The notes under the pieces were generated by a model that saw nothing but the letters and a program-made list of their open reading frames with translations, did not search any database and was not told where the DNA came from. From contig JAPDFW010000065.1 in assembly GCA_028826165.1 (NCBI GenBank), forward strand, positions 434,001 to 498,000: DNA of 64,000 bases, read 5' to 3'. Position numbers and translations under genes: made by a program. How positions within the stretch are numbered: the stretch's first letter is position 1; each line of letters begins with the position of its first letter. Below are positions 3,455 to 63,274 of the stretch, piece by piece. The stretch is from Anaeramoeba ignava BMAN (Eukaryota; Protista; Anaeramoebae).

Positions 3455-3539
3455 TTTTTTTAATTTCAAAAAATAAAAAATGAAAAATGAAAAAAATTAA
3501 AATCAAAAATTATTTTTTTCATTTTTTTTCTTTTCAAAA

Positions 3540-5344
3540 ATGAATGAAATTATATTTTTTGGTCAAAATGAATTCCAAAACTTATCAAAAATGAACCAAA
3601 TAAAATAATAAAACCAATTCAATTTAAATTTGAAAATGAAAATGAAAATGAAAATGAAAAACAAATTAAACAACTTTCATCAAGTGAACTTTCAACAATT
3701 TTCCTTTTTAAAAATGGAAAAGCAATAGAATATTTAGAAAATTCAAAACAAAATCCTCAAAAAATTCAAATTGAAAATATTCAAAAAGTAACTGTTAGTT
3801 GTGAAAATGAAGCTATTTTAACAATAGAAGGAAATGTATTTGCAAAAGGAAATAATATTAATCCAAAAAAACCAAAAGAATTTATCAATATTTCATCATT
3901 AATTAAAGATAAAAATGATAGAATAATTCAAGATGCTGTTTCTGGAGCTCTTGCAATTTACTTATTAACTTCAAATCAAAATGTTTATGGAATTGGCTCA
4001 AATGAATTTTGCCAACTTGGTTTTGATTCTGAAACACTTCCAAAAACAGAAAAACCAATTTTAATGATGAAAAATGTTTCTAAAATATTTTCAGGAAATA
4101 CTTCTTCTCATGTTTTTCTTTTAAATTCAAATCAAGAATTATTTGGATGCGGATATAATGAAGATGGTCAACTTGGATTAGGAGAATCAAAAAAAGAAAC
4201 AGAAATCCATAAATTAATCAAAATCCAAAATATTCCAAAAGGCAAAATAATTGATATTCAATGTGGGTTTTCTCATTCAATAATGCTGATTGAAAATGAA
4301 GATGAAAATCCAAACAGAAAACTTTATTCATGTGGAAATTATCTATTTAATGGACTTGGCAAAAATAAAAATACTTATGAATTTACTGAAATCAAATCAT
4401 CTTTATTTGAAAATGATGATAATATTCTTGATTTTTCTTGTGGAGGTTTTCATAATTTGGTTTTAACATATAAAGGGAAATTAATTGGATTTGGAAATAA
4501 TTATTCTGGTCAATTAGGAACTGGAGATACAGAAGATCAATTAATTCCAATTCAAATTGAAATTCCTAAATTAAGATTTAATGAAAATATTTCTAATTAT
4601 CATGTTTTTTGTGGAGATGACAGTTCATTTCTTTATTATTCTCCTTTTTCTTTTTCCAATCTTGAAGAAGATTTGATAAAATTATTTAGAAGAAAAGAAT
4701 TTTGTAATATTTCATTTAAAACAGAAAATGGAGAAATAATCAAAGCTCATAAATTAATATTGAAATATAGATTAAATCAAAATCAAAATGAAATTGAAAA
4801 ACTTAAAGAAATTATTTCAAAAAAATCAATTAAAGAATCAAATCAAATATTTGAAATGATTTATTCAAATAATTCCAAAATAAATCCAAAATTATATTCT
4901 GAAATTAAAGAAATTATAAATTCCAATGAAAAAATAGAAGAAACAATGAAAAGAATTTATTTAAATGAAAATGAAAATGAAAATGAAAAAGATTTTATTA
5001 TTGAAAGAAAAGAAAAACAATATAAATTTCCTAAATTAATATTAATAATGAGAAGTGAATTATATCGAGGAATGTTTTTATCTGTTACAGAAGATAAATC
5101 TAATAAAGTTACAGATTATAGTGAATTAAGTAATGAATCATTTCAAATATTTGAATATTGGATTTATTCAAATCAAATTAAAGAAGGAATTCAAATTACA
5201 CAAGAAATCATTAATGAAATTAAAATTGGAATTGATTATTTTCAATTAAATCAAACAAATCCAAATTTATTTGATTTATTAATTAAAAAATTTGATAATC
5301 AAAATCAAAAACAGAAATCAAAAGAAAAATGTTTAATTTTTTAA
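3540..5344 (+). CDS. RCC1-repeat + tandem BTB/POZ protein with C-terminal CaaX (CLIF), copy 1; 1-nt frameshift near 3573
   Basis: Near-identical to the intact 9780-11582 copy. RCC1 motifs GxNxxGQLG and BTB motifs CNISF...AHKLIL and RSELYRGMF are present. AATTCC here versus AATATCC in paralogues gives the frameshift. Confidence 0.85.
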
Positions 5345-5664
5345 TAATTAAAATTAAAATTAAAATTAAAATGTTTAATTTTTTAATAATTAAAATCGAT
5401 TTAATTTAATATTGAATTTATTTTCGTTTCATTTTAATATTTTAATTAATGAATTTAAATTTAGTTATTATTAATTTCTATTTTCAATTTTTATTTTGGT
5501 TTAATATTTTCTTTTTCATTTAATCTTCTTTTTAATAATATTTTTAATTTAAAATTAATTTTTAAAATTTGTTTTGTTTCTTATTTATTGATTTGAAGAA
5601 TTTAAATTGATTAAAAGTAAATTAAAATTGAATTGAATTTTGAAAAAAAAAAAGAAAAAAGCTT

Positions 5665-8600
5665 TTAAATAAAATAAGTTTCAAGTTCATCAACAATCCA
5701 TGAATTCTCAGAACCAGCTAAATAACTATTAGCCTCTTTTGATTTAAATTTAATTCCATCAGGTAGATTATAATTATAACCAAAATTTGAATTACCAGAT
5801 TGTAATTTCGAATTTACAACAAAATCACCTATACATATTTTAATAAAGATAAATAATTATTTAATTTAGATTTATTTAATTTTAAATTGAAATAATGATA
5901 TTATTGATTATATTAATATTTTGGATTATTTATTAATTTAATTTTAATTATAATAATAAAAATTATTTACCATCTGTTTTGATCAAGATAAATAATTAAT
6001 TAATTTAAAATTTATTTAATTTTAAATTGAAATAATGATATTATTTATTATATTTATATTTTGGATTATTTATTAATTTCATTTTAATTATAATAATAAA
6101 TTATTTACAAGCTATTTTAATAAAAATAAAATTAATTTTATTAATAATTAATAATTATTTAATTTAAAATTAATTTTATTTTTAAATTGAAATAATGATA
6201 TTATTTATTATATTAATATTTTGGATTATTTATTAATTTAATTTTAATTATAATAATAAATTATTTACGATCTATTTTAATAAAGATAAATAATTAATTT
6301 TAATAATAATTAATAATAATTTAATTTAAAATTGATTTTATTTTAAATTGAAATAATGATATTATTTATTATATTAATATTTTGGATTATTTATTAATTT
6401 AATTTTAATTATAATAATAAATTATTTACGAACTATTTTAATAAAGATAAATAATTAATTTTAATAATAATTTAATTTAAAATTAATTTTATTTTAAATT
6501 GAAATAATAATATTATTTATATTTTTGGATTATAATAATAATAATTATAATTATTTACTAACTATTTTAATCAAAATAAATAATTAATTTTAATAATAAT
6601 TAATAATTATTAAATTTAAAATTAATTTTATTTTAAATTGAAATAATGATATTATTGATTATATTTATATTTTGGATTATTTATTAATTTAATTTTAATT
6701 ATAATAATAAATATTTACAATCTATTTTAATAAAGATAAATAATTAATTTTAATAATAATTAATAATTATTAAATTTAATTTAAAATTAATTTTATTTTA
6801 AATTGAAATAATGATATTATTTATTATATTAATATTTTGGATTATTTATTAATTTAATTTTAATTATAATAATAAATTATTTACAATCTATTTTAATAAA
6901 GATAAATAATTAATTTTAATAATTAATAATTTAATTTAAAATTAATTTTATTTTTAAATTGAAATAATAATATTATTTATTAATTTAATTTTAATTATAA
7001 TAATAAATATTTACAATCTATTTTAATAAAGATAAATAATTAATTTTAATAATAATTTAATTTAAAATTTATTTTATTTTAAATTGAAATAATAATATTA
7101 TTTATTAATTTAATTTTAATTATAATAATAAATATTTACCATCTATTTTAATAAAGATAAATAATTAATTTTAATAATAATTAATAATAATTTAATTTAG
7201 ATTTATTTAATTTTAAATTGAAATAATGATATTATTTATTAATTTAATTTTAATTATAATAATAAATATTTATTATTCACATCCAAAAGCTGGACCATAA
7301 TCATAAAAATAAAAAATTGCATATTTTTGTTTTCCTTGTTGTGTTGGAAATAGATCTTCTTTTCTATCCCCTTTATCATTTCTTAATGAAAAAATAAATG
7401 CATTTGGATCTTGAATCCATCCTCCTTCAGAATTATGAGGATTCATTTTACTCCATTTTGATTTATCATTTGTCCATCCAACTTGAGTAAATCCTCCAAA
7501 AATAAAATTATCTTTTGTTTTGATAATAACTAATGTTTTTCCTTTATCATCACAAATATTATGCCATGTTTTAGAATCAAATCCATTTTTTTTTGCTGAA
7601 AATCCTTTTTTCATTTTATAACAAAAACTAGAATCATTTATCCATTCTTGTAATTTCTTAACATATTTAATCTCTGTAATAATTTCTGAATCTGAAAAAA
7701 TCTTTTGAAATTCCATCAACTCAAATCCTTGTTTGATTTCCTCAATTTCTTCCTTCCATTTCTCTTCCATTTCTTGCTTTGTGTTTTCCAATTCTTTCTG
7801 AAATGATAATTGAAGATTATGAATTTCTTCATCTTTTTTCTCATTTTGTAACTTTAAATCCAAAATTTCCTTTCTTTTTTTATCATTTTCAGATTCAAAT
7901 GATTTGATTCTTTTATCTCTTCTTTTAATTTTCTTTTCTCTTCTTTTAATTTTCTTTTCTTTTTCATTGATTTTTTGTTGATTTTCCTTATCTTGAATTT
8001 GAAAAATAGTTCTTTCAAGATTAATTAAAAACGATTTTGGAAGAAAAATATCAAATTGTTTTAATTTATCAAAATCTTGTTTTGAAATTGAATCTTTATC
8101 AAATAATGAAAAAAAAGAATGAAATAATCTTTTCTTTTCAATTCCCTTTTGTTTTTCTTTTTCTTTTTCTTTCTTTCTTTTTAATTTTTCATTTCTTTCT
8201 TTTTAATTTTTCATTTCTTTTTTGAATCCAATTATTTAAAAATTGAAAAAAATCAAATTGAAAAATTTCTTTTTTTTCTTGTTTAAATTGAATAAATTTG
8301 ATAATTTCTTCTTTAGTTAAATTGAATAAATTCTCATTATTTTGAATTTGGGAAAAATTTTGATTTATTAATTCAAAACATTTTATTTCAATTTCATTTG
8401 AATTTAAATTTCGATTTTGGAATAAAAATTGGAAAAAATTTGAATAATTAATTGAATTTAAAATTTTTTTTTGAATAATTTCTTTCAATAAATTTAATTT
8501 AAAATAAATTGAAATTTCCAATAATTGAATAAGATTTTCTTGATTCTCAAAAGAAATATTTCCATAATAAATATATTTCAAAATTGATTCCATTTCTTTT

Positions 8601-8887
8601 TTATTAAAGTTATTTAAAAATATTTTATCAATATCATTTTGTCCTTTTAAAGACTCATTAAAAAAAGGAGATCTTGAAGATAAAATTGATTTATGAACTT
8701 TAAATTCAAAAGTATTTGATCCATTCTCAACAAAAATTGAAAAATCAGTAAATGAATTTCCATTTAAAAGGTTTGAATAATCTTTAATTAAATTTTTTGT
8801 TACTTTTTTTTCTAAATTTTTCATTTCATTTTCATTTTGATTTTGATTTGCATTTTCAATTTGGTTATTATTATCATTATTATCCAT
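5665..8887 (-). CDS. BTB/POZ + coiled coil + TLDc domain protein, copy 1 (frameshift from a 22-bp tandem duplication at 8175-8218; microexon array in last intron region)
   Basis: BTB: FTDFSIFV..FKVHKSILSSRSPFF. TLDc: GFDSKTWHNICDDKGKTLVIIKT..FIFGGFT..DPNAFIFSL..GPAFG. Terminal exon 5828-5665 reads DFVVN..SNFG..YLAGSENSWIVDELETYFI*. Confidence 0.85.
5829..7280 (-). repeat. Tandem array of ten 122-163 nt GT-AG intron units separated by nine 3-nt putative microexons
   Basis: Each junction reads AAAA(T/C)AG-NNN-GTAAAT on the minus strand. Triplets: 7142-7140 ATG, 7017-7015 ATT, 6887-6885 ATT, 6721-6719 ATT, 6561-6559 TTA, 6432-6430 TTC, 6271-6269 ATC, 6111-6109 CTT, 5973-5971 ATG. Confidence 0.85.
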
Positions 8888-9284
8888 TTTGTTTTTTGTT
8901 TTTTGTTTTTGTTTTTTATGTTTTAAAAAAAAAGGAAAAAAATGAAAAAAATAAAAATGAATATTTTTTTCCATTTTTTGAAAATAAATAAAAATATAAA
9001 AAATAAGAATAAATTTAAATTAATAATTAATTTAATTTTCTTTTTAATTTATTATTTTAAATTAATTTATTAATAAATTATTATTATTTTTTATTAATTT
9101 TTATTATTAAAAAAAAAGGAAAATTATTTTAATTTAATTTTTAATTTAATTTTTTTTTTTGGAATTTAAAAATTATTAATAAATTTAAATTTTAAAACAA
9201 TTTTCTAAGTTAATATTAATTCAATTTAATTCAAAAAAAAAGATAAAATTTTAATTTCAAAAAAATCAATTTTCAAAATATTTT

Positions 9285-9705
9285 TAAATAATAAAATAAT
9301 TAAATCTAAAACAATAAATTATTATTTTAAACATAGAATTAAATATTAAATTATATTTTTTAAATTAATTTATAAATTAAATATTAAATTAAATCTATTC
9401 TTATTTTTATATTTTTATGTAAAATATTTAAATAATAAAATATTTAAATTTAAAACAATAAATTATTATTTTAATAATAAAATTAAATATTAAATTATAT
9501 TTTTAAATTAATTTATAAATTAAATATTAAATTAAATCTATTCTCATTTCTTATATTTATATGTTAAATATTTAAATAATAAAATATTAAAATTTAAAAC
9601 ATTAAATTATTATTTTAATAATAAAATTAAATATTAAATTATATTTTCAAATTAATTTATAAATTAAATATTAAATTAAACTATTCTCATTTTTTATATT
9701 TAATA
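9285..9705. repeat. ~143-bp AT-rich tandem repeat (3 units) between divergent BTB-TLDc and RCC1-BTB genes
   Basis: The unit with TAAAACAATAAATTATTATTTT...AAATTAAATCTATTCT recurs at ~9301, ~9444 and ~9588. Confidence 0.75.
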
Positions 9706-9779
9706 AACAAATTTTCAAAATATTTTTCCAAATTAATAAAATTCCAAAATTATTTTTTTCATTTTTTTTCTTTTTAAAA

Positions 9780-11582
9780 ATGAATGAAATTATATTTTTT
9801 GGTCAAAATGAATATCCAATCCTTTTCAAAAATGAATCAAATAAAATAATAAAACCAATTCAATTTAAATTTGAAAATGAAAATGAAAATGAAAATGAAA
9901 ATGAAAAACAAATTAAACAACTTTCATCAAGTGAACTTTCAACAATTTTCCTTTTTGAAAATGGAAAAGCAATAGAATATTTAGAAAATTCAAAACAAAA
10001 TCCTCAAAAAATTCAAATTGAAAATATTCAAAAAGTAACTGTTAGTTGTGAAAATGAAGCTATTTTAACAATAGAAGGAAATGTATTTGCCAAAGGATAT
10101 AATATTAATCCAAAAAAACCAAATAATTTTATCAATATTTCATCATTAATTAAAAATAAAAATGATAGAATAATTCAAGATATTGTTTCTGGAGATAGTT
10201 CAATTTATTTATTAAGTTCAAATCAAAATGTTTATGGAATTGGTTCTAATTATTCTGGTCAACTTGGTTTTGATTCTGATGCACTTGATGAAACAAAAAA
10301 ACCAATTTTAATGATGAAAAATGTTTCTAAAATATTTTCAGGAAATACTTCTTCACATGTTTTTCTTTTAAATTCAAATCAAGAATTATTTGGATGCGGA
10401 TATAATGAAGATGGTCAACTTGGATTAGGAGAATCAACAAAAGAAGAAACAGAAATCCATAAATTAACCAAAATCCAAAATATTCCAAAAGGCAAAATAA
10501 TTGATATTCAATGTGCAGATTCTCATTCAATAATTTTGATTGAAAATGAAAATGAAAACAGAAAACTTTATTCATGTGGAAATTATTCATATAATGGACT
10601 TGGCAAAAATAAAAATACTTATGAATTTACTGAAATCAAATCATCTTTATTTGAAAATGATGATAATATTCTTGATTTTTCTTGTGGAGGTTTTCATAAT
10701 TTGATTTTAACAACTAAAGGGAAATTAATTGGATTTGGAAATAATTATTCTGGTCAATTAGGAACTGGAGATACAGAAGATCAATTAATTCCAATTCAAA
10801 TTAAACTTCCTAAATTAAGATTTAATGAAAATATTTCTAATTATCATGTTCTTTGTGGAGATGACAGTTCATTTCTTTATTATTCTCCTTTTTCTTTTTC
10901 CAATCTTGAAGAAGATTTGATAAAATTATTTAGAAGAAAAGAATTTTGTGATATTTCATTTAAAACCAAAAATGGAGAAATAATCAAAGCTCATAAATTA
11001 ATATTGAAATATAGATTAAATCAAAATCAAAATGAAATTGAAAAACTTAAAGAAATTATTTCAAAAAAATCAATTAAAGAATCAAATCAAATATTTGAAA
11101 TGATTTATTCAAATAATTCCAAAATAAATCCAAAATTATATTCTGAAATTAAAGAAATTATAAATTCAAATGAAAAAATTGAAGAAACAATGAAAAGAAT
11201 TTATTTAAATGAAAATGAAAATGAAAAAGATTTTATAATTGAAAGAAAAGATAAAGAATATAAATTTCCTAAATTAATATTAATAATGAGAAGTGAATTA
11301 TATCGAGGAATGTTTTTATCTGTTACAGAAGATAAATCTAATAAAGTTACAGATTATAGTGAATTAAGTAATAAATCATTTCAAATATTTGAATATTGGA
11401 TTTATTCAAATCAAATTAAAGAAGGAATTCAAATTACACAAGAAATCATTGATGAAATTAAAATTGGAATTGATTATTTTCAATTAAATCAAACAAATCC
11501 AAATTTATTTGATTTATTAATTAACAAATTTAATAATCAAAATCAAAAACAGAAATCAAAAGAAAAATGTTTAATTTTTTAA
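9780..11582 (+). CDS. RCC1-repeat + tandem BTB protein with CaaX (CLIF), copy 2 (intact)
   Basis: 600-aa intronless ORF with GxNxxGQLG repeats, two BTB-like domains and the ending KSKEKCLIF. Confidence 0.92.
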   Translation: MNEIIFFGQNEYPILFKNESNKIIKPIQFKFENENENENENEKQIKQLSSSELSTIFLFENGKAIEYLENSKQNPQKIQIENIQKVTVSCENEAILTIEGNVFAKGYNINPKKPNNFINISSLIKNKNDRIIQDIVSGDSSIYLLSSNQNVYGIGSNYSGQLGFDSDALDETKKPILMMKNVSKIFSGNTSSHVFLLNSNQELFGCGYNEDGQLGLGESTKEETEIHKLTKIQNIPKGKIIDIQCADSHSIILIENENENRKLYSCGNYSYNGLGKNKNTYEFTEIKSSLFENDDNILDFSCGGFHNLILTTKGKLIGFGNNYSGQLGTGDTEDQLIPIQIKLPKLRFNENISNYHVLCGDDSSFLYYSPFSFSNLEEDLIKLFRRKEFCDISFKTKNGEIIKAHKLILKYRLNQNQNEIEKLKEIISKKSIKESNQIFEMIYSNNSKINPKLYSEIKEIINSNEKIEETMKRIYLNENENEKDFIIERKDKEYKFPKLILIMRSELYRGMFLSVTEDKSNKVTDYSELSNKSFQIFEYWIYSNQIKEGIQITQEIIDEIKIGIDYFQLNQTNPNLFDLLINKFNNQNQKQKSKEKCLIF

Positions 11583-11902
11583 TAATTAAAATTAAAATTA
11601 AAATTAAAATGTTTAATTTTTTAATAATTAAAATCGATTTAATTTAATATTGAATTTATTTTCGTTTCATTTTAATATTTTAATTAATGAATTTAAATTT
11701 AGTTATTATTAATTTCTATTTTCAATTTTTATTTTGGTTTAATATTTTCTTTTTCATTTAATCTTCTTTTTAATAATATTTTTAATTTAAAATTAATTTT
11801 TAAAATTTGTTTTGTTTCTTATTTATTGATTTGAAGAATTTAAATTGATTAAAAGTAAATTAAAATTGAATTGAATTTTGAAAAAAAAATGAAAAATAGT
11901 TT

Positions 11903-14575
11903 TTAAATGAAATAAGTTTCAAGTTCATCAACAATCCATGATTCATAAGAACCAGCTAAATAACTATAAGATTCATTTGTTCCATATTTAATTCCATCAG
12001 GTAGATTATAACTATTGCCAAAATTGGAACGGCCAGATTGTAAATTAGGTTTTATCCAAAAATCACCTATACATATTTTAATAAAGATAAATAATTAATT
12101 TTAATAATAATTAATAATAATTTAATTTAAAATTGAAATAATAATATTATTTATTATATTAATATTTTGGATTATTTATTAATTTAATTTTAATTATAAT
12201 AATAAAAATTAATTTTAATAATAATAAAAATAATTTAATTTACCCCCTTTGGTTTAAACCTTTTTAATAAAGGAAAAAATAACTTTTTAATTTTTAATTG
12301 CAAAATTTAAACCTTTTACAAAATATTTAAACCTTTTGCAAAAATTTTAAATTTAAAATTAACTTTTTATTTTAAATTGAAATAATAATATTTTTTTATT
12401 ATATTGAATTATTTATTAATTTAAATTTAATTATAATAATAAATATTTACAAACTATTTTAATAAGGGATAAATAATTAATTTTAATAATAATTAAATAA
12501 TAATTTGTTTTTTTAAAATTAAATTTATTTTAAATTGAAATAATAATATTATTTATTATATTAATATTTTTGAATTATTTATTAAATATAAAATATTTAT
12601 ATTTACTCCCTATTTTAATAAAGATAAATAATTAATTTTTAATAATAATTAATAAAAATTTAATTTTAAAAGGTTTAAAATTTTTATTTTAAATTGAAAA
12701 AATAAATATTATTTATTATATTAATATTTTGGATTATTTATTAATTTTAAATTTAATTATAATAATAAGTATTTACCATCTATTTTTAATAAGGATAAAT
12801 AATTAATTTTAATAATAATTAATAATAATTTAATTTATATTTATTTAATTTTTAAATTGAAATAATAATATTATTTATTAATTTAAATTTAATTATAATA
12901 ATAAGTATTTACCATCTATTTTAATAAAGATAAATAATTAATTTTAATAATAATTAATAATAATTTAATTTAAAATTAATTTTATTTTAAATTTAAATAA
13001 TATTATTATTTATTAATGTAAATTTAATTATAATAATAAATATTTACCATCTATTTTAATAAGGATAAATAATTAATTTTAATAATAATTAATAATAATT
13101 TAATTTTAAATTAAATTTATTTTAAATTGAAATAATAATATTATTTATTAATTTAATTTTAATTATAATAATAAATATTTATATTTACTCCCAAAAGTTG
13201 GACCATCACTTAAACACCAAATAATTGCATATCCTTCCCTTTCTTTATTAATTGTAAACTTCTGTGGGTCTCTATCTCCTTTATCATTTCTTAATGAAAA
13301 AATAAATGCATTTGGATCTTTCATATATCCAAAATAACCTCCATCATAATTCCATTTTGATTTATCATTTGTCCATCCAACTTGAGTAAATCCTCCAAAA
13401 ATAAAATTATCTTTTGTTTTGATAATAGATAACGTTGTTCCTTTCCCATCAACTGATTTATGCCAATTTTGAGAATTAAATCCATCTCTTTTGGCTGAAA
13501 ATCCTTTTTTCATTTTGGAAAAAAAATCATTATCATTTATCCATTCTTGTAATTTCTTAACATATTCAATATCTGTAATAATTTCTGAATCTGAAAAAAT
13601 CTTGTGTAATTCATTTAATTCAAACCCTGGTTTCATTTTCTCAATTTCTTTCTCTTTATCTTCAATTTCAATTTTCATTTGTTGATTTTCTTTCTCTTTA
13701 TTTTCAATTTCTTTTTGATTATCTTGAATAACTTTGTTTTGAATATCAACTAAAAAAGATTTGGGAAAAAAACAATCAAATTGTTTTAATTTATCAAAAT
13801 CTTGTTTTGAAATTGAATCTTTATCAAATAATGAAAAAAAAGAATGAAATAATCTTTTCTTTGCATTCATTTTGTGTTTATATTTCCTTAATTTTAATTT
13901 TTCATTTCTTTTTTCAATCCAATTATTTAAAAATTGAAAAAAATCAAATTGAAAAATTTCTTTTTTTTCTTGTTTAAATTGAATAAATTTGATAATTTCT
14001 TCTTTAGTTAAATTGAATAAATTCTCATTATTCTGAATTTGGGAAAAATTTTTATTTATTAATTCAAAACATTTTATTTCAATTTCATTTGATTTTAAAT
14101 TTCGATTTTGGAATAAAAATTGGAAAAAATTTGAATAATTAATTGAATTTGAAATTTTTTTTTGAATAAATTCTTTCAATAAATTTAATTTAAAATAAAT
14201 TGAAATTTCCAATAATTGAATAAGATTTTCTTGATTCTCAAAAGAAATATTTCCATAATAAATATAACTCAAAATTGATTCCATTTCTTTTTTATTAAAT
14301 TGATTTAAAGAAATAGAAAGAGATTCTTGCCTTAATGACTCATTAAAAAAAGGAGATCTTGAAGATAAAATTGATTTATGAACTTTAATTTCAAAAGGAT
14401 TTGATCCATTCTCAACAAAAATTGAAAAATCAGTAAATGAATTTCCATTTAAAAGGTTTGAATAATCTTTAATTAAATTTTTTGTTACTTTTTTTTCTAA
14501 ATTTTTCATTTCATTTTCATTTTGGTTTTGATTTTGATTTGCATTTTCAATTTGGTTATTATTATCATTATCCAT
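11903..14575 (-). CDS. BTB/POZ + TLDc domain protein, copy 2 (intact; microexon array in last intron region)
   Basis: Exon 14575-13189 ends GPTFG-A|GTAAAT. Terminal exon 12066-11903 reads DFWIKPNLQSGRSNFG..YLAGSYESWIVDELETYFI*. Confidence 0.9.
12067..13188 (-). repeat. Second tandem intron / 3-nt microexon array
   Basis: AG-NNN-GT junctions at 13050-13048 ATG, 12915-12913 ATG, 12779-12777 ATG, 12609-12607 GGA and 12453-12451 TTT. A possible GGG at 12246-12244 lies in noisy sequence. Confidence 0.78.
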
Positions 14576-14989
14576 TTTGTTTTTTGTTTTGTTTTTTGTT
14601 TTGTTTTTTGTTTTTGTTTTTTGTGTTTTAAAAAAAAATGAAAAAAATGAAAAAAATAAAAATGAATATTTTTTTCCATTTTTTGAAAATAAATAAAAAT
14701 ATAAAAAATGAGAATAAATTTAAATTAATAATTAATTTAATTTTCTTTTTGATTTATTATTTTAAATTAATTTATTAATAAATTATTATTATTTTTTATT
14801 AATTTTTTTTATTAAAAAAAAAGGAAAATTATTTTAATTTAATTTTTAATTTAATTTTTTTTTTGGAATTTAAAAATTAATAATAAATTTAAATTTTAAA
14901 AACAAATTTCCAAATTAATATTAATTCAATTTAATTCAAAAAAAAAGATAAAATTTTAATTTCAAAAAAATCAATTTTCAAAATATTTT

Positions 14990-15555
14990 TAAATAATAAA
15001 ATATTTAAATCTAAAACAATAAATTATTATTTTAAACATAGAATTAAATATTAAATTATATTTTTAAATTAATTTATAAATTAAATATTAAATTAAATCT
15101 ATTTTCATTTTTTATATTTATATGTAAAATATTTAAATAATAAAATATTTAAATATAAAACATTAAATTATTATTTTAAACATAAAATTAAATATTAAAT
15201 TATATTTTTAAATTAATTTATAAATTAAATATTAAATTAAACCTATTCTCATTTCTTATATTTATATGTTAAATATTTAAATAATAAAATATTTAAATCT
15301 AAAACAATAAATTATTATTTTAAACATAAAATTAAATATTAAATTATATTTTTAAATTAATTTATAAATTAAATATTAAATTAAATCTATTCTTATTTTT
15401 TATATTTATATGTTAAATATTTAAATAATAAAATATTAAAATTTAAAACATTAAATTATTATTTTAATAATAAAATTAAATATTAAATTATATTTTCAAA
15501 TTAATTTATAAATTAAATATTAAATTAAACTATTCTCATTTTTTATATTTAATAA
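14990..15555. repeat. ~144-bp AT-rich tandem repeat (4 units), paralogue of 9285-9705
   Basis: The same unit recurs at ~15005, ~15150, ~15295 and ~15437. Confidence 0.75.
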
Positions 15556-15639
15556 ACAAATTTTCAAAATATTTTTCCAAATTAATAAAATTCCAAAAAT
15601 TATTTTTTTCATTTTTTTCATTTTTTTTCTTTTTCAAAA

Positions 15640-17471
15640 ATGAATGAAATTATATTTTTTGGTCAAAATGAATATCCAAAACTTTTCAAAAATAAATCAT
15701 ACGAAATAACAAAACCAATTCAATTTAAATTTGAAAATGAAAATGAAAATGAAAATGAAAATGAAAATGAAAAACAAATTAAACAAATTTCATCAAGCGA
15801 ACTTTCAACAATTTTCCTTTTTAAAAATGGAAAAGCAATAGAATATTTAGAAAATTCAAAAACAAAAATCCTCAAAAAATCCAAATTGAAGAAAATATTC
15901 AAAAAGTAACTGTTGGTTGTGAAAATGAAGCTATTTTAACAATAGAAGGAAATGTATTTGCAAAAGGAAATAATATTAATCCAAATAATTCAAATAATTT
16001 TATCAATATTTCATCATTAATTGAAGATAAAAATGATAGAATAATTGAAGATATTGTTTCTGGAGCTTATTCAATTTACTTATTAACTTCAAATCAAAAT
16101 GTTTATGGAATTGGTGCAAATTATTATGGTCAACTTGGTTTTGATTCTGAAACACTTTTCAATACAGAAAAACCAATTTTAATGATGAAAAATGTTTCTA
16201 AAATATTTTCAGGAAATAATTCTTCACATCATTTTTTTCTTTTAAATTCAAATCAAGAATTATTTGGATGCGGATATAATGAATCTGGTCAACTTGGATT
16301 AGGAGAATCAACAAAAGAAGAAAAAAAAATCCAAAAATTAATCAAAATCCAAAATATTCCAAAAGGCAAAATAATTGATATTAAATGTGCAGATTCTCAT
16401 TCAATAATGTTGATTGAAAATGAAAATGAAGATGAAAATCCAAACAGAAAACTTTATTCATGTGGAAATTATCAATATAATGGACTTGGCAAAAATAAAA
16501 ATACTTATGAATTTACTGAAATCAAATCATCTTTATTTGAAAATGATGATAATATTCTTGATATTTCTGTTGGAGTTAATCATACTTTGATTTTAACATA
16601 TAAAGGGAAATTAATTGGATTTGGAAATAATTATTCTGGTCAATTAGGAACTGGAGATACAGAAGATCAATTAATTCCAATTCAAATTAAACTTCCTAAA
16701 TTAAGATTTAATGAAAATATTTCTAATTATCATGTTTTTTGTGGAGATGACAGTTCATTTCTTTATTACTCTCCTTTTTCTTTTTCCAATCTTGAAGAAG
16801 ATTTGATAAAATTATTTAGAAGAAAAGAATTTTGTGATATTTCATTTAAAACCAAAAATGGAGAAATAATCAAAGCTCATAAATTAATATTGAAATACAG
16901 ATTAAATCAAAATCAAAATGAAATTGAAAAACTTCAAGAAATTATTTCAAAAAAATCAATTAAAGAATCAAATCAAATATTTGAAATGATTTATTCAAAC
17001 AGAATAATAAATCCAAAATTATATTCTGAAATTAAAGAAATTATAAATTCCAATGAAAAAATTGAAGAAACAATGAAAAGAATTTATTTAAATGAAAATG
17101 AAAATGAAAATGAAAAAGATTTTATAATTGAAAGAAAAGAAAAACAATATAAATTTCCTAAATTAATATTAATAATGAGAAGTGAATTATATCGAGGAAT
17201 GTTTTTATCTGTAACTGAAGATACTTCTAATAAAGTTACAGATTATAGTGAATTAAGTAATAAATCATTTCAAATATTTGAATATTGGATTTATTCAAAT
17301 CAAATTAAAAAAGAAATCGAAATTACACAAGAAATAATTGATGAAATTAAAATTGGAATTGATTATTTTCAATTAAATCAAACAAATCCAAATTTATTTG
17401 ATTTATTAATTAACAAATTTGATAATCAAAATCAAAAACAGAAATCAAAAGAAAAATGTTTAATTTTTTAA
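15640..17471 (+). CDS. RCC1-repeat + tandem BTB protein with CaaX (CLIF), copy 3; frameshift in A-runs near 15858-15869
   Basis: ORFs 15640-15909 and 16182-17471 join by homology to copies 2 and 4. There are extra A residues in TCAAAAACAAAAATCC. Confidence 0.85.
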
Positions 17472-17619
17472 TAATTAAAATTAAAATTAAAATTAAAATT
17501 AAAATTAAAATTAAAATTAAAATTAAAATTAAAATTAAAATTAAAATTAAAATTAAAATTAAAATTAAAATTAAAAATAAAAATCCAAAATTCATTTTTT
17601 CATTTTTTTCTTTTCAAAA

Positions 17620-19434
17620 ATGAATGAAATTATATTTTTTGGTTTAAATGAATATCCAAAACTTTTCAAAAATGAACCAGATAGAATAAAAAAACCAATT
17701 CAATTTAAATTTGAAAATGAAAATGAAAATGAAAAACAAATTAAACAAATTTCTTCTTCAAATTATTCAACAATTTTCCTTTTTGAAAATGGAAAAGCAA
17801 TAGAATATTTAAGAGATTCAAAACAAAATCCTCAAAAAATCCAAATTGAAGAAAATATTCAAAAAGTAACTTTTGGTGATGAAAATGAAGCTATTTTAAC
17901 AATAGAAGAAAATGTATTTGCCAAAGGATATGATATTAATCCAAAAAAACCAAATAAATTTATCAACATTTCATCATTAATTGAAGATACAAATGATAGA
18001 GTAATTGAAGATATTGTTTCTGGAGCTTATTCAATTTACTTATTAACTTCAAATCAAAATGTTTATGGAATTGGTGCAAATTATTATGGTCAACTTGGTT
18101 TTGATTCTGAAACACTTTTCAATACAGAAAAACCAATTTTAATGATGAAAAATGTTTCTAAAATATTTTCAGGAAATGCTTCAAAATTTGTTTTTCTTTT
18201 AAATTCAAATCAAGAATTATTTGGATGTGGCGATAATAATTCTGGACAAATTGGATTAGGAGAATCAAGAAAAGATGAAAAAATCCAAAAATTAACCAAA
18301 ATCCAAAATATTCCAAAAGGCAAAATAATTGATATTAAATGTGCAGATTCTCATTCAATAATGTTGATTGAAAATGAAAATGAAAATCCAAACAGAAAAC
18401 TTTATTCATGTGGAAATTATCAATATAATGGACTTGGCAAAAATAAAAATACTTATGAATTTACTGAAATCAAAACATCTTTATTTGAAAATGATGATAA
18501 TATTCTTGATTTTTCTGTTGGAAGTTTTCATAATTTGATTTTAACATCTAATTCAAAATTAATTGGATTTGGAAATAATTCTTTTGGTCAACTAGGAACT
18601 GAAACTGGAGCTGGAGATACAGAAGATCAATTAATTTCAATTCAAATTGAACTTCCTAAATTAAGATTTAATGAAAATATTTCTAATTATCATATTTCTT
18701 GTGGAGAATTCAAATCATTTCTTTATTACTCTCCTTTTTCTTTTTCCAATCTTGAAGAAGATTTGATAAAACTATTTGAAAGAAAAGAATTTTGTGATAT
18801 TTCATTTAAAACCAAAAATGGAGAAATAATCAAAGCTCATAAATTAATATTGAAATATAGATTAAATCAAAATCAAAATCAAATTGAAAAACTTCAAGAA
18901 ATTATTTCAAAAAAATCAATTAAAGAATCAAATCAAGTATTTGAAATGATTTATTCAAATAATTCCAAAATAAATCCAATATTATATTCAGAAATTAAAG
19001 AAATTATAAATTCAAATGAAAAAATAGAAGAAACAATGAAAAGAATTTATTTAAATGAAAATGAAAATGAAAAAGAAAAAGATTTTATAATTGAAAGAAA
19101 AGAAAAACAATATAAATTTCCTAAATTAATATTAATAATGAGAAGTGAATTATATCGAGGAATGTTTTTATCTGTAACTGAAGATACTTCTAATAAAGTT
19201 ACAGATTATAGTGAATTAAGTAATAAATCATTTCAATTATTTGAATATTGGATTTATTCAAATCAAATTAAAGAAGAAATTCAAATTACACAAGAAATAA
19301 TTAATGAAATTAAAATTGGAATTGATTATTTTCAATTAAATCAAACAAATCCAAATTTATTTGATTTATTAATTAACAAATTTAATAATCAAAATCAAAA
19401 ACAGAAATCAAAAGAAAAATGTTTAATTTTTTGA
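17620..19434 (+). CDS. RCC1-repeat + tandem BTB protein with CaaX (CLIF), copy 4 (intact)
   Basis: 604-aa ORF with the same architecture as the other copies. Confidence 0.92.
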   Translation: MNEIIFFGLNEYPKLFKNEPDRIKKPIQFKFENENENEKQIKQISSSNYSTIFLFENGKAIEYLRDSKQNPQKIQIEENIQKVTFGDENEAILTIEENVFAKGYDINPKKPNKFINISSLIEDTNDRVIEDIVSGAYSIYLLTSNQNVYGIGANYYGQLGFDSETLFNTEKPILMMKNVSKIFSGNASKFVFLLNSNQELFGCGDNNSGQIGLGESRKDEKIQKLTKIQNIPKGKIIDIKCADSHSIMLIENENENPNRKLYSCGNYQYNGLGKNKNTYEFTEIKTSLFENDDNILDFSVGSFHNLILTSNSKLIGFGNNSFGQLGTETGAGDTEDQLISIQIELPKLRFNENISNYHISCGEFKSFLYYSPFSFSNLEEDLIKLFERKEFCDISFKTKNGEIIKAHKLILKYRLNQNQNQIEKLQEIISKKSIKESNQVFEMIYSNNSKINPILYSEIKEIINSNEKIEETMKRIYLNENENEKEKDFIIERKEKQYKFPKLILIMRSELYRGMFLSVTEDTSNKVTDYSELSNKSFQLFEYWIYSNQIKEEIQITQEIINEIKIGIDYFQLNQTNPNLFDLLINKFNNQNQKQKSKEKCLIF

Positions 19435-25446: not shown

Positions 25447-28400
25447 TTAATTCTTCTTTTTCTGCTTTTTCTGCTTCAACAAACTATCAAATTGACCTTT
25501 AAAAGCAACATATCTTTGATATCTTTGAGTAATATCATTAAGAAGTTGGTCTTGTTTGAGTTTTGCATCATCAGGGAAAGTAGACTTAAGACTTTCAAAA
25601 CGATTCTCTGATTTCAAGAATTCATGGAAACCTGGCTTTGGTTTTGAGGAGTCAAGAACCATTGGGTTTTTTCCTAAGGCGAGTAAGTTAGGATCATAAC
25701 GATAAAGAAGATAATATCCTTTACTGATTGCTTCTTTTGCATGAGCAGGTCCGATTCCGAGACCGTTCTTGATGCCGTGCTCGATGCAAGGGCAGTAAGC
25801 AATGACGAGGGAAACGCCTTTGTGCTTCTCTGCCTCTGTAATTGCCTTGATGGCCTGAGTGGGGTTAGCAGAGAGACAGATGGATGCGACATAAACATTT
25901 CCATAGGTGATTGCCATCATCCCAAGATCCTTCTTTGCCGTGGTTTTTCCTGATGCTGTGAACTTCGCTACTCCCGCTCGCGGTGTCGATTTGGATGACT
26001 GCCCTCCGGTGTTGGAATAGACCTCAGTGTCAAGTACTAGAAGATTCACATCTTCCCCACTCGCTAATATGTGATCAACTCCCCCATAGCCAATGTCATA
26101 CGCCCAGCCGTCTCCGCCTTGTATCCATATAGACTTCTTCGCGAGAAGATCTTTGTTTTTGTAGATGTAATTCATCGCGTTTTCTGTCTCGTTTGAAAAT
26201 TCGGAAAAAATGGATTTTTTTGAATTTGTTTCGAAAAGATGTTTTTTGGATTCTAAATATTTCTGGATTTCTTGGGAAACGTTATTGGATTCAACGCGAT
26301 CATCGAAAACATCGATCCATTTGCGAAGAAGCGATGTGAGAACGGGGTCTTTTTCAAAGAGATCCTTTGCGAGAAAGTCCTTGATATAAGCCATCAATTT
26401 GACTCTGAGTTGAGAAACTGATTTGGCGATTCCGAGACCGTATTCGGCATTATCTTCAAAAAGGGAGTTTCCCCAAGCAGGACCATGACCAAGACTGTTT
26501 GAGGTGTAAGGATTCCAGGGGAAAGTTCCGCCCCACACGGATGAGCATCCAGATGCGTTTGCGATGATCATCTGGTCTCCGAAAAGCTGAGTAACCAGCT
26601 TGATAACTGGCGTCTCTCCGCATCCAGCGCAAGCGCCAGAGAACTCAAGAAGAGGTTGTGAAAATTGACTGCCTTTGAGAGTGGTTGTTTTGTAGATACT
26701 ATCCCGTGTCGGGAGTTTCATCATGTAATCCCAATTATCTCCGTGTTTTGTCTTCATAGTTTCTGACGGAACCATTTGAAGACAGTTTTCGGGACATGCG
26801 TTCGCACATACGGTGCATCCTGTGCAATCAAACGGGGAAATTTGGATCGTGAATTTATATTCCTTTGTTTTTGGATCCTCGAGAACATCAATAACCTCAG
26901 GATAAGGCGCTTTGTTTTTTTCTTCCTCGGAAATGAAAAAAGGTCGAATTGCTGCGTGCGGACAAAGCACAGAGCACATGTTGCATTGAATGCACTTGCT
27001 CGAATCCCATTTAGGCACAAAATCAGAGAATCCTCGTTTCTCATATTTACTTGTTCCTGAAGGAATTTTCCCTGCGAAATCAAGTTTAGTCAAAGGTAGA
27101 TTATCCCCCTTCATTGCTAAAATTGGTCGCATTACATCCCGTACAAACTGCGGATCTTGAACAATGATTTTCTTTGGGATTGTTTGAAGATCGTTTTCTG
27201 GATCAGCATCCTTCCATGTCTCGGGATACTTGATCTCAATAATGTTCCGTATTCCGGTGTCAACTGCGTCCTTGTTTTTCTGCACAATATCCTCACCCTT
27301 CCGCATATACTCTTTCTCAATCGCCTTCTTTAGAAGCCCGATGGCTTTGTCTTCCGGAAGAACATTACTCAATTTGAAGAATACTGCCTGCATGATCATG
27401 TTGATTCTTCCGCTCAATCCAACCTCATCCGCAATTTTTGATGCGTCGATGTTATAGAATTGCAGTTTTTTGCGTGCAATCTGTCTTTTCACGTTATTTG
27501 GAAGATTTTTCTCAAGTTCCTCAATAGTGTTCCATGGTGAGTTGAGGATGAATTTACTCCCCGGTTTTGCTGGATTCAGAAGATGATCATATTTTCCAAG
27601 ATAAGATTTCAAATGGCAGGCAATATAATCCGAATCGGTAATCATATAAGAGGAATCAATATGTTTTGGACCGAAACGGAGATGTGAAATTGTTACACCA
27701 CCAGACTTGTGAGCAGAATAGGCGAAATAACCCTGTCCATACAAAGGTGTATTTTCCACAATGATTTTGATTGCGTTCTTATTGGCTCCCACAGTTCCAT
27801 CAGAACCCATTCCCCAGAAAATACATTGTTTTGTACCTTGAGGCACGGCATCGATATTTTCTCCGAAACTCAACGAAGTATTCAAAATATCATCAGTGAT
27901 TCCGACAGTAAAATTGTTTTTCGGATTCAATTGATTCAAATTATCGTAAATTGAGCGAACCATTGCGGGTGTGAATTCCTTACCACCAATTCCGAATCTC
28001 CCACCGATAACTTCGATGTTCTTTCCATGAACCGCAGAGACGACGTCTGATTGGAGAGGTTGAGACGGTGCTCCGTTCTCTTTTACTCGATCAAGAACGG
28101 CGATTCTTTTGACCGTTTTTGGCAACGCACTCAAAAAATGTTCCACAGAAAAAGGTCGATATAACCGAACCTTAATGAGCCCGATTTTCTCATTGGGGAA
28201 TTTCTCAATTATCTCTTCCACAGGAGACGCTCCCGATCCCATTACAACAACAACTCTCTCTGCCTCAGGATGGCCGAGATAATCAAACAAACGATATTGT
28301 CTGCCTGTTTTTTCTGCAAATTGGTCCATGTATTGCTGAACAATATAAGGAACTTTGTTATAATATCTGGCGGTTTCCTCAATAAACTGGAAATACACAT

Positions 28401-31021
28401 CTGTGCCCTGAACAGTTCCTCTCAGATGCGGGTGTTCAGGATTTAAGGATTTTTCTCTGTGTTTCTCAATGGCTTGGTAGTCCACCATTTTCTTCATCAA
28501 TTCAGGATTTAAAACATCGACTGAATTAACTTCGTGGGAAGTTCTGAAACCGTCAAAGAAATGAAGGAAAGGAATAGAAGATTGAATTGTGGCGAGATGT
28601 GATATAAAGCCTAAGTCCATAACTTCCTGGACTGTTCCCGAGCTCATCATTGCGAATCCTGTTTGTCTTGTTGCCATTACGTCTGAATGATCACAGAAGA
28701 TGGATAAACCTTGTCCTCCTACAAGTCGAGAGCTTATGTGGAATACTGCTGGCATTAATCCCCCAGCTATTTTGTACATGTTGGGAATCATCAGAAGTAA
28801 TCCTTGAGATGCTGTGAATGTTGTTGCTAATGCTCCTGCTGCTACTGCTCCGTGAAGTGCTCCTGCTGCTCCTCCTTCAGATTGCATTTCTGTTACTTGT
28901 AATGGTATTCCGAAAATGTTTTTTTTCCCTTCTGCGCTCCATTTATCTGCGAGTTCTCCCATTGTACTTTTTATTTAAATATTTATTAGATTTAATTATT
29001 TATTAAATTTATATATTTATTTGATTTGAATTAAATATTTATTTGATTTGAATTAAATTAAATATTTATTAGATTTGAATTAAATATTGATTTAAATATT
29101 TAAAGATTTATTTGATTTAAATATTTATTTGATTTAAATTAAATATTGATTTGAATTAAATATTTGATTTGATTTGATTTGATTTAAATTAAATATTTAT
29201 TTGATTTGATTTGATTTAAATTAAATATTGATTTGATTTGATTTGATTTGATTTGATTTAAATATTTATATATTGATTTGATTTAATTATTTATTTGATT
29301 TAATTTAAATATTTATTTGATTTAATTTGAATTAAATATTTATTTGATTTGAATTAAATTAAATATTTATTAGATTTAATTTAAATATTGATTTGATTTG
29401 ATTTGATTTGATTTGATTTGATTTTAATTAAATATTTATTTGATTTAAATTAAATATTTATTTGATTTTAATTAAATATTTATTTGATTTGAATTAAATA
29501 TTGATTTGATTTAAATATTTATTAGATTTGATTTGATTTAAATTAAATATTTATTTGATTTAATTTAAATATTTATATATTGATTTAATTTAAATATTTA
29601 TTTGATTTGATTTAAATATTTATTAGATTTAATTTTATTTGAATTAAATATTTATTTGATTTAATTTAAATATTTATTTGATTTGATTTGAATTAAATAT
29701 TTATTAAATTAAAGATTTATAAGATTTGGAAAATAAATTGATGATTCATTGGTCGATTTTGCGAATAGATGATCGAAAAATTGGCCAAAAATCATTTTCT
29801 TTAATAACACATCTTTTTGAGCCATTTCTTTTGTTTGTTGTTGAGAAGAAAGGGGTCGAGAAAGTTTATAATACTGATAACAAAAATAAAACTTCTCAAA
29901 TTTATTTTGCTTTTTTTTTCTTTTATTTGAATAACTTCTTGCAATTTTGAAATAACCATTTTATTCTCAATAAGTTTTATATTTGTTTTTTATTTTTAAA
30001 TTTGAATCAATTTAATTTATAGTTGAGATATAAGGAGTTCTTTTTCAAAACTATTAAAATTTATATGTTCTCCCATTTTGGTAAAAAAATCACTCTATGC
30101 AAAAAGTTTGAAATTATATTTTATTGATGAAAAAGATATTCTTTTTTTTACCAAAATGGGAGAAGATGTCTAAAATACTCAAATAAAAAATGAACAAGAA
30201 AATTTCCATTGTATGTAATTGACATCTAAAAGAAATCAATAAAGAATTGTTGATAACTTTTTGAAATATTTTGTCATTGTAATGAAATTAAAAACAAAGA
30301 TCCTTTCATACAATGAAGAAAGAATAATCTGAAGAGATAATTTATTTTCAAAATCTAATGAAAAGATTATTCTATTCTCTTAATTCATTTGTTAGAATAA
30401 AAAATCCAAAATCATTTGTCAAAGAAGAGAAAGAATCAAGAAGAGAAATTGAATTGAATTGAGAGATTAGATGAGAAAAGAAACTATTGATTCAAATTGA
30501 CAAAATCGATTCAAAATATGAAGAAAAAGAAAAAGAAAATTTTAATAAAGAATGAAAAAAACAATAAAAAATTTTGAATTTGGTTATTTCATTTTTAGTC
30601 AAAAAATCTCTTCTTTGTTTTTATCAGAAAAATAATCGATAACAAAGGAAATTATTTCATATATTATCAATAACTCTCAAATTTAGAAAGATAGCATCTT
30701 TTCGCAAAATCGACCATTGTTATTTTAAATAAAATTAAATAAAATTAAAAAAATAGAAACACTTACGTTGCTGGAGTAATTGGATATAAAAAAGCTACAT
30801 CACTCATCATATAACCAATATAAGCAGCTGCTGTGTTTCCATCCATTGGTTCTTTTGTCTAATTTACAAAAAAAAAAAGAAGAAAATTAACAAAAAAATT
30901 ATTTAATAAAATTTTTATTGATTTTTTTTTTTTGATTTAAAAAATTTTTTTTTACTGAAAACATTTTAAAAAGTGAATTACTTATGATCTTCTTCTTAAT
31001 TTTTTTTGTTGTCTGTAACAT
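25447..31021 (-). CDS. PFO: Pyruvate:ferredoxin oxidoreductase with N-terminal organellar-type leader
   Basis: Exons 31021-30956, 30858-30767 and 28966-25447. Motifs MDGNTAAA, YPITPA, EMQSEGGAAG, two CxxCxxCxxxCP, SGACAGCGE, and the TPP motif GGDGWAYDIG...EVYSNTGGQ. Confidence 0.97.
28975..29715. repeat. (ATTTG/ATTTA)n degenerate pentamer satellite in PFO intron 2
   Basis: Direct inspection of the sequence. Confidence 0.8.
29747..30719. mobile_element. Putative non-autonomous DNA transposon (MITE-like), ~973 bp, 25-bp terminal inverted repeats, inside PFO intron 2
   Basis: 29747-29771 CATTGGTCGATTTTGCGAATAGATG matches the reverse complement of 30695-30719, CAATGGTCGATTTTGCGAAAAGATG, at 23/25 positions. 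The interior is complex sequence, unlike the other introns. No clear target-site duplication. Confidence 0.7.
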
Positions 31022-46758: not shown

Positions 46759-46793
46759 TTTTGAAAAGTAAAAAAATGAAAAAAATAATTAAA

Positions 46794-62300: not shown

Positions 62301-63274
62301 ATAAAAGGAGTTTTGACAGCTATAGATTTTTTGGCATCTGACTGGAAAATTGAGAAAATACCAGTTACTGCAATACGTGTGCCAGGTGAGACTTTTTCAA
62401 CAAGATATCTATCAAGATAAAGAAGAACATGTCTGGGAATTTCGCCTGTCGGAATATTCTCAGGGGTCTCTTGAAGCTTCATCAATTGGCGGTCGATAAA
62501 CTTGCATTTATCAGGTAAAATCACATAAGGATCTAAAGGACATTCCACATTTTGTTGAGCGCCGATTCCTGATTGTCTCCCGCATGTTCTGGGCAAGATC
62601 AACTTGTTTCCGTTTTCTGTTTCCGATCGGATCCATATTTTATGACCGCAATTACGGCATTGGCAAACAAGTATTCGTGCTTTTGCTTGATTTGGTGTTG
62701 CTGAAACAACAATTCCTGAAATGCGAACTATTTTTGATATCAAATCGGAATTTAAGTTCCGAATTTCCTTTCTTTTCCCTCCTCCTGTTAATAAAATCTG
62801 GATCTCATTCAAATCAGGCAAAACTAATTCATCTTGATTTTCATTTTCAATATCTAATTGTGTATTTTTTGGATCGGCAAAAAAATCCGATTCAAAAGCT
62901 AAACTTTGATCTTGTTCTTCTTGTGTTTGTTGATTATTTTGCGTCGTTTTTTTCTGTTCTGTTGTTAGTAAGGATAAACATTCAAATGCTGATGATTCAA
63001 ATAGTTTTAAAACTCGATTTGGATTTTGCATTAATTCGTTTAATAAATTTTCATCAAATACTCCAATGTCTTCTAAAGAAATATTGAGATAATATTGTTT
63101 TAAATGAAAATTGTGAAGAAGTTGATCTCGATAAATGTAAGAATTTTGTTTTCGGAATTTTCTTATGAATTGAATAAAATTTTGTTTTATATTAATTGTT
63201 TTTCTTTGAATTTCATCATTTGTAGTTAAACCTTGATTACTAATAAAAACTGAACCAGTATCAAAACCACTCAT
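59320..63274 (-). CDS. MCM5: DNA replication licensing factor MCM5, interrupted by an intron (61545-61998) and an intein
   Basis: MSGFD start, zinc finger CRNC..C..CPLDPY, GDPSTSKSQ, FYLEGGAMVLADDGVVCIDEFDKM, AAANPVFGRYDD, SRFD and PITVRQLE. Confidence 0.95.
60289..61503 (-). mobile_element. Intein (405 aa) with degenerate LAGLIDADG endonuclease in MCM5
   Basis: In-frame insertion VYASGKGS|SVHHKEPVIV...VTKDHSLL (block B)...VYDFSVENETFMLSNMIFVHN|SAVGLTASV. It starts with Ser1, ends His-Asn, and is followed by Ser+1. Confidence 0.95.

What the first reader, a model, noticed from the sequence alone, without database searches (positions are those of the whole stretch)
12067..13188. Paralogous BTB-TLDc gene has its own microexon array with a different number and set of triplets
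Seen: the same position and phase as in copy 1, but the triplets are ATG, ATG, ATG, GGA, TTT and possibly GGG. Full inclusion gives GPTFG-NDDGI-(C or WG)-DF, again stop-free in every combination. The neighbouring 3' intergenic DNA (5345-5650 vs 11583-11890) is almost identical between the duplicates, yet the arrays differ. Inference: the array turns over quickly while AG-3nt-GT is retained, which argues for selection on the 3-nt spacing.
Basis: partly seen in the sequence, partly recalled or inferred. Interest (0 to 1): 0.85.

Follow-up and report, generated by a model that had tools for sequence, protein, structure and literature searches.

The report
Protein loop written as one-codon exons
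In the anaerobic amoeba Anaeramoeba ignava, this gene and about 45 sister genes carry rows of near-identical introns separated by three variable bases at one protein loop, most likely one-codon exons that let the loop grow, shrink and change one amino acid at a time, but RNA proof of how they are spliced is still missing.

Summary
The array is real: minus strand, phase 1, triplets ATG, ATG, ATG, GGA, TTT, then a doubtful GGG in a noisy unit, between the GPTFG exon and the terminal DF exon of a BTB-TLDc gene of Anaeramoeba ignava BMAN. At least 45 TLDc genes have an intron at this codon, holding 0 to about 30 triplets. Of 351 exact-flank spacers, 336 are 3 nt; all 15 exceptions lie in homopolymers of a nanopore assembly. 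Triplet composition follows the phase-1 reading frame (GA-start 0/336, against 5/28 in a phase-0-like run), which supports real coding exons. Best reading: single-codon exons, mostly included in order, shuffled at DNA level through their cloned introns (50%). Rivals: combinatorial skipping (30%), or one long skipped intron (15%). The one public run laid showed no included triplets. Closest known: truffle nank codon-sized exons. This scan found the same system before on other DNA of this genome.

The parts
13189..14575 (-). Upstream coding exon: BTB, BACK-like and coiled-coil region, and most of the TLDc domain, ending GPTFG plus one phase-1 base (A)
   Evidence: ORF; Pfam BTB E=3e-14, TLD E=6e-16
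13051..13188 (-). Intron 1, 138 nt, first-intron-type donor
13048..13050 (-). 3-nt exon candidate 1, ATG
12916..13047 (-). Intron 2, 132 nt
12913..12915 (-). 3-nt exon candidate 2, ATG
12780..12912 (-). Intron 3, 133 nt
12777..12779 (-). 3-nt exon candidate 3, ATG
12610..12776 (-). Intron 4, 167 nt
12607..12609 (-). 3-nt exon candidate 4, GGA; it equals the last three bases of the upstream exon and is followed by a first-intron-type donor, so it is probably a copy of the upstream exon end
   Evidence: the only such case among 12 arrays
12454..12606 (-). Intron 5, 153 nt
12451..12453 (-). 3-nt exon candidate 5, TTT
12244..12450 (-). Noisy sixth unit (204 nt) and doubtful triplet GGG at 12244-12246; probably an unpolished stretch
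   Evidence: 13 G against 2-3 in other units; R9.4/R9.5 nanopore assembly with Pilon
12067..12243 (-). Last intron, 177 nt, with the longer terminal-type acceptor shared by 44 sites in the genome
11903..12066 (-). Terminal exon: two bases completing the loop, then DFWI...ETYFI and stop
   Evidence: a 92-nt contig of public run X1 matches 11910-12001 with no difference
5829..7280 (-). Paralogous array of copy 1: ten introns, nine triplets, same codon and phase

Best explanation
Each AG-NNN-GT triplet is a real single-codon exon between complete short introns. The units arose by tandem duplication of one phase-1 intron together with three neighbouring exon bases (mostly the first three of the terminal exon, N-T-G; once here the last three of the upstream exon). 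The spliceosome removes each intron on its own, so most triplets are included in order and add one residue each to the glycine-bend loop between GPxFG and D of the TLDc domain (here NDDGIC or NDDGIWG). The near-identical introns act as recombination handles: unequal crossing-over and gene conversion add, delete, copy and swap single codons, and point changes at the two amino-acid-changing positions are retained. Some skipping is likely on top. Shown: anatomy, family, phase, block duplications, frame-specific composition, loop position. Inferred: inclusion in mRNA, order of inclusion, recombination mechanism, and any role as a varied binding surface of a BTB (probable Cullin-3) adaptor.
For: 45 of 45 first donors are phase 1. 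Spacers are 3 nt in 336 of 351, and every exception is in a homopolymer. Units of 53-230 nt match ordinary introns of this genome (median 102, mode 76; PMC11550330 Table S3). The wobble-position base is T 281, G 48, A 7, C 0, and GA-start is 0/336. A run on contig C1 with the same splice flanks has middle A in 16/28, GA-start in 5/28 and ends in A/T in 28/28, so the bias follows codon phase, not splice chemistry. Within homogeneous arrays diversity is 0.56-0.79 at the two non-synonymous positions, 0-0.14 at the wobble position in three of four and 0.02 in introns. Paired units of recent duplicates differ at 7/57 triplet sites against 1.5% in introns, including two ATG/GGG swaps and two multi-unit block duplications. 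Stop-capable triplets follow a T-ending neighbour in 3 of 23 cases against 37% background, p=0.011. Array span runs continuously from one intron to 5.2 kb.
Against: No RNA record shows an included triplet. Full inclusion would give 16-31-residue, Tyr/Asp-rich loops in the long arrays, whereas presumed intronless paralogues have 1-10 residues and are Gly-rich. At least three genes would have an in-frame stop on full inclusion (L008; C137:806328; C93:986466). The neighbour test is not significant against the successor control (5/17, Fisher p=0.19). The few intronic C columns are also very variable (0.18-0.51), so G/C decay explains part of the triplet variability.
Confidence: 0.5

Rival explanations
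1. Combinatorial or one-of-n alternative splicing: the triplets are cassette exons and each transcript takes a small, varying subset, so one gene makes many loop variants (16-32 distinct peptides for copy 2, 255 for copy 1), as reported for truffle nank genes.
For: One to a few triplets give loops of the length seen in intronless paralogues (1-10 residues, mostly 2-3). Nine of 12 fetched arrays are stop-free in all sampled subsets. In-order stops and units that have lost their splice sites would be tolerated. Terminal acceptor and first donor differ from the internal ones in all arrays read.
Against: AA/AG-starting triplets sit in at least seven genes whose upstream base is T, where single inclusion gives a stop (6 of 17 in L008, about 9 units in C137:801-806k). 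Repeated identical triplets add nothing under one-of-n choice. No docking or selector elements were seen. Unchecked notes of this scan report that runs of 3-nt exons in ankyrin genes of this genome are all spliced in.
Confidence: 0.3
2. A minisatellite inside one long intron: the whole array is removed in one piece, as the public annotation has it, and the triplets never reach the mRNA; their variability is G/C decay and conversion.
For: Annotated proteins of array genes have the skip form (copy 1 = KAJ5075458.1, loop C; C1 genes loop S). One-residue loops exist in 10 intronless genes, and one gene has a single intron here (C66:152010-152219). Intronic C sites are labile.
Against: It does not explain why variability and base avoidance follow the phase-1 codon positions and differ from a phase-0-like run with the same flanks. 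G is 38% at the third triplet position against 0.6% in intron bodies. The skip codon would be Cys in 9 of 35 genes, against 5 of 99 last loop residues and 0 of 10 one-residue loops in intronless genes (genes are related, so not independent). Standard aligners miss 3-nt exons (PMC8831610), so the annotation is not evidence.
Confidence: 0.15
3. Assembly artefact (repeat expansion in a nanopore assembly).
For: The sixth unit of copy 2 and parts of L007 are visibly noisy; the assembly is nanopore plus Pilon.
Against: 45 loci on about 20 contigs, units that differ in length and sequence, orthologous unit order shared between paralogues, fixed phase.
Confidence: 0.02

Closest known systems
[quoted passage not shown] 2012, as described in PMC4986451 and PMC13449251)
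   Same: Expanded paralogous family; tens of codon-sized exons; proposed diversification of a binding surface.
   Different: There alternative splicing is reported and the exons lie in ankyrin repeats of NLRs. Here all triplets sit at one point of a non-repeat TLDc domain, between cloned near-identical introns, in phase 1, and splicing is untested. I could read only secondary descriptions of the truffle work.
Schistosoma micro-exon genes (MEGs; PMC4015677 citing DeMarco et al. 2010)
   Same: Runs of very small exons; variants by exon skipping are the proposed output.
   Different: MEG exons are several codons long (own knowledge), make up to 75% of secreted proteins and have documented skipping; here exons are exactly 3 nt and form one loop of a BTB-TLDc protein.
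[quoted passage not shown]
   Same: DNA-level shuffling of one-unit-per-exon modules under diversifying selection in a fast birth-and-death family.
   Different: The unit there is a whole LRR or TPR repeat; here it is one codon, and the homology for recombination comes from the introns.
TLDc family (OXR1/NCOA7/TBC1D24/mEAK-7)
   Same: Pfam TLD match; a model of an intronless paralogue matches 7OBP, 4ACJ, 6R82 and 8AR6 at E of about 1e-6. By motif (FG then loop then strand) the array position corresponds to the glycine-rich bend between two beta strands of NCOA7 (PMC8608904, PMC8329711).
   Different: Hundreds of copies fused to BTB/BACK; the bend is variable in length and sequence; V-ATPase binding is untested here.
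Introners / introner-like elements (own knowledge)
   Same: Many near-identical introns in one genome.
   Different: Copies are head-to-tail at one codon of one gene family, not dispersed over unrelated genes; no terminal repeats were looked for or evident.

Membership tests
Codon-sized microexon diversification (truffle nank type) | Multiple 3-nt exon candidates with GT-AG boundaries, frame-preserving | tested here: met
Codon-sized microexon diversification (truffle nank type) | Exons shown in mRNA | tested here: inconclusive
   Run X1 covers the exons but no joint reveals the letters between them; no transcript-derived protein found
Codon-sized microexon diversification (truffle nank type) | Alternative use of the exons among transcripts | not testable with these tools
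   Only assembled contigs of one run, one call
Codon-sized microexon diversification (truffle nank type) | NACHT plus ankyrin architecture | tested here: not met
   BTB plus TLD only
Mutually exclusive exon cluster (Dscam type, one of n) | Every single alternative gives an open frame | tested here: not met
   Met in copy 2, but not family-wide: stops for 1/25, 1/15 and 6/17 triplets in three fetched arrays and in further genes
Mutually exclusive exon cluster (Dscam type, one of n) | Docking/selector RNA pairing | not tested
   Introns are 96% A+T, so folding would not be discriminating
Schistosoma MEG | Micro-exons form most of the coding sequence of a secreted protein | tested here: not met
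   15-18 nt of a roughly 1.55-kb coding sequence
TLDc domain family | Profile match and fold | tested here: met
TLDc domain family | V-ATPase binding | not testable with these tools
   needs biochemistry
Introner | Near-identical introns inserted at unrelated sites in unrelated genes | tested here: inconclusive
   All 12 arrays read lie at the same TLDc codon; about 45 donor sites account for most pattern hits, but a few isolated hits (C79, C108) were not inspected

The most novel reading that the evidence does not exclude
A two-level, single-codon-resolution diversity generator: cloned introns let recombination rewrite a row of one-codon exons in the genome, and stochastic skipping lets each of about 45 genes make hundreds to millions of loop variants of a BTB adaptor, possibly for recognising symbiont or pathogen proteins.
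Probability: 0.25. Interest if true: 0.9.

Novelty: new variant of a known kind. Interest (0 to 1): 0.7.

Why it matters
If the triplets are included, this is an extreme gene structure: up to about 30 consecutive one-codon exons that the spliceosome must handle by intron definition, all missed by the public annotation. It would show how a protein loop can be lengthened, shortened and reshuffled one residue at a time, because introns supply the homology that a single codon lacks. It also gives a directly readable record of intron gain by tandem duplication. If skipping is extensive, it would be a receptor-diversification system in a free-living anaerobic protist with bacterial symbionts. One amplicon experiment decides between these.

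Tried and rejected
RNA evidence: one run found and laid once. Its joints 12013-13280 and 12024-13187 stop short of the copy-2 exon boundary and so come from paralogues, with the letters between not given: uninformative. Homologue searches with short exon pieces found no transcript-derived A. ignava proteins, and cluster members were only genome annotations. The look-up of encoding contigs returned nothing for six proteins because records of this genome are left out. No match in metagenome contigs. Rejected: (a) that full skipping is structurally impossible, since 10 intronless genes have one-residue loops; (b) that intronless paralogues are retrocopies of spliced arrays, since their loops use GGA and CCA codons that the arrays almost cannot write; (c) that the T/G bias of the middle base is a splice-site rule; (d) monophyly of array genes could not be shown or excluded (quick tree, 69 of 118 forks open). 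The noisy stretch 12230-12360 could not be re-polished because no DNA reads were available.

Full report
Source. The window is contig C66:434001-498000 of a 42,843,398-base, 147-contig assembly. That matches Anaeramoeba ignava BMAN exactly (PMC11550330 Table S1), and the homologues are annotated A. ignava proteins. The assembly is nanopore-based and Pilon-polished; annotated introns have median 102 and mode 76 bases. Word searches of the genome paper, its supplements and the A. pumila preprint found no mention of microexons or TLD-domain genes.

Observation. The finding is in the sequence as described. On the minus strand a BTB-TLDc reading frame ends at GPTFG plus one base, followed by seven GT-AG units of 132-204 bases and the triplets ATG, ATG, ATG, GGA, TTT and a doubtful GGG, then a terminal exon that resumes with two bases and DFWI. 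The sixth unit has 13 G against 2-3 elsewhere and looks unpolished. All ordered subsets are stop-free, which is expected because none of these triplets starts with AA, AG or GA.

Family. The junction pattern occurs 406 times against 11 for the control. The genome has 556 TLD candidates; 45 carry a donor right after GPxFG or GPxFGG, all in phase 1, and 44 sites show the longer terminal acceptor. Donor-to-acceptor spans run from a single intron to 5.2 kb. Twelve arrays read in full hold 6 to 30 triplets. With exact flanks, spacers are 3 bases in 336 cases, 4 in 13, 2 in 2, and never 0, 1 or 5-8; each exception contains a doubled base.

Are the triplets coding? In phase 1 the middle base is the third codon position. 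It is T in 281, G in 48, A in 7 and C in 0, and no triplet starts with GA. A separate run on contig C1 with the same splice flanks has middle A in 16 of 28, GA-start in 5 of 28 and A or T last in all 28 (p about 2e-15 and 2e-6), as expected of phase-0 codons. So the bias follows the frame. Within homogeneous arrays the first and third positions have diversity 0.56-0.79, the middle 0-0.14 (0.62 in one array) and intron bodies about 0.02. A control weakens this: the four or so intronic C columns have diversity 0.18-0.51, though they mostly switch between two states, whereas triplet positions hold three or four, including G. Among 19 mutually best unit pairs in the C1 cluster, triplets differ at 7 of 57 sites against 1.5% in introns, with two ATG/GGG swaps inside nearly identical introns and visible block duplications.

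Stops. 27 of 336 triplets start with AA or AG, close to the roughly 10% expected from their base frequencies, and they occur in at least seven genes whose upstream exon ends in T, where single inclusion gives a stop. In genomic order they follow a T-ending neighbour in 3 of 23 cases against a 37% background (p=0.011), but this is not significant against the successor control (5 of 17, p=0.19). At least three genes have a stop on full inclusion. The data lean towards in-order inclusion and away from one-of-n choice, without settling it.

Turnover argument. Copies 1 and 2 are 97-99.7% identical in the RCC1-BTB gene, the intergenic DNA and the BTB region, but 87-88% in the TLDc exons that flank the arrays. 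The intergenic match therefore does not date the arrays. Better evidence of turnover comes from the C1 cluster, where close paralogues carry 15, 16, 25 and 30 triplets.

Protein context. Presumed intronless paralogues have 1-10 residues between GPxFG and D, rich in Gly, Asn, Tyr and Ser. A confident model of one of them (pLDDT 91.6) has this stretch as a coil between strands and matches NCOA7, OXR2, Skywalker and mEAK-7 TLDc structures. By motif it corresponds to the glycine-rich bend of NCOA7, which is partly disordered in crystals; I did not obtain a residue-level alignment for this. Copy 2's full-inclusion loop (6-7 residues) lies within the intronless range; the long arrays (16-31 residues) do not. 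The public gene models checked skip the array or read into the first intron.

RNA. One public run of unrecorded kind holds part of the stretch. Its contigs cover the exons, include an exact 92-base match to copy 2's terminal exon, leave part of the intergenic DNA and several array bins empty, and give no joint with readable inserted letters. This fits spliced RNA but does not show inclusion or skipping.

Mechanism. Most likely (50%): tandem duplication of an intron plus three exon bases made the first microexon. ATG and TTG, two of the three commonest triplets, have the N-T-G form of the terminal exon's first bases, and copy 2's GGA unit copies the upstream exon end with its donor. Unequal crossing-over and conversion among the cloned introns then add, delete and swap codons, and splicing includes most triplets in order. 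Combinatorial skipping (30%) and one long skipped intron (15%) remain open. Anatomy, phase and composition are shown; inclusion, recombination and function are inferred.

Comparison and novelty. The nearest described case is the truffle nank family with alternatively spliced codon-sized exons; schistosome MEGs and Ectocarpus exon shuffling share the logic at larger unit size. Literature searches found no description of cloned-intron arrays with one-codon spacers, within a library that lacks most subscription journals. I file it as a new variant of a known kind. This scan noted the same system on other TLDc genes of this genome; those notes are not independent evidence. Searches were made exon by exon, and the joined spliced model was left out of all searches.

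Noticed in passing
G000:C1:409307-413056 and C1:1796391-1796941: Runs of 3-nt spacers every 70-90 bases with phase-0-like codons (all end in A or T), outside TLDc genes.
   Followed up: partly
G000:C87:272864-275781: A second family of cloned-intron units of about 180 bases with variable triplets and an intron body unlike the TLDc one. Host gene not identified.
   Followed up: no
window 8189-8200 (-): Copy 1's BTB-to-coiled-coil frame shifts in an A-rich run; assembly error or pseudogene. The public model KAJ5075458.1 joins BTB and TLDc across it.
   Followed up: partly
window 7280 (-): Copy 1's first donor is GTGAAT, the only one of 45 first donors that departs from GTAAAT.
   Followed up: no
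G000:C66:152010-152219: A TLDc gene with a single intron at the array position and no triplet: ancestral state or a collapsed array.
   Followed up: partly
L008 (G000:C35:350754-354037): Array with AAT/AAC triplets giving three in-frame stops on full inclusion and 6 of 17 on single inclusion.
   Followed up: partly
window 3500-19434 and 44943-48653: Tandem RCC1-BTB genes alternating with BTB-TLDc genes; several split by apparent frameshifts.
   Followed up: partly
window 59320-63274 (-): MCM5-like helicase gene with a probable intein of about 350 residues before the SAVGLTAS motif; inteins are known to be abundant in Anaeramoeba (PMC10710043).
   Followed up: no
window 25447-28962 (-): Pyruvate:ferredoxin oxidoreductase-like ORF with about 41% G+C, far above the genome; probably highly expressed.
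   Followed up: no
window 15000-15500 and 9283-9702: A 144-base A+T tandem repeat upstream of both BTB-TLDc copies, without obvious AG-NNN-GT junctions.
   Followed up: no
A. ignava intron statistics (PMC11550330 Table S3A): The longest annotated intron is 4,168 bases, close to the span of the C137:748.5-752.7k array (about 4.1 kb); not checked whether they are the same.
   Followed up: no
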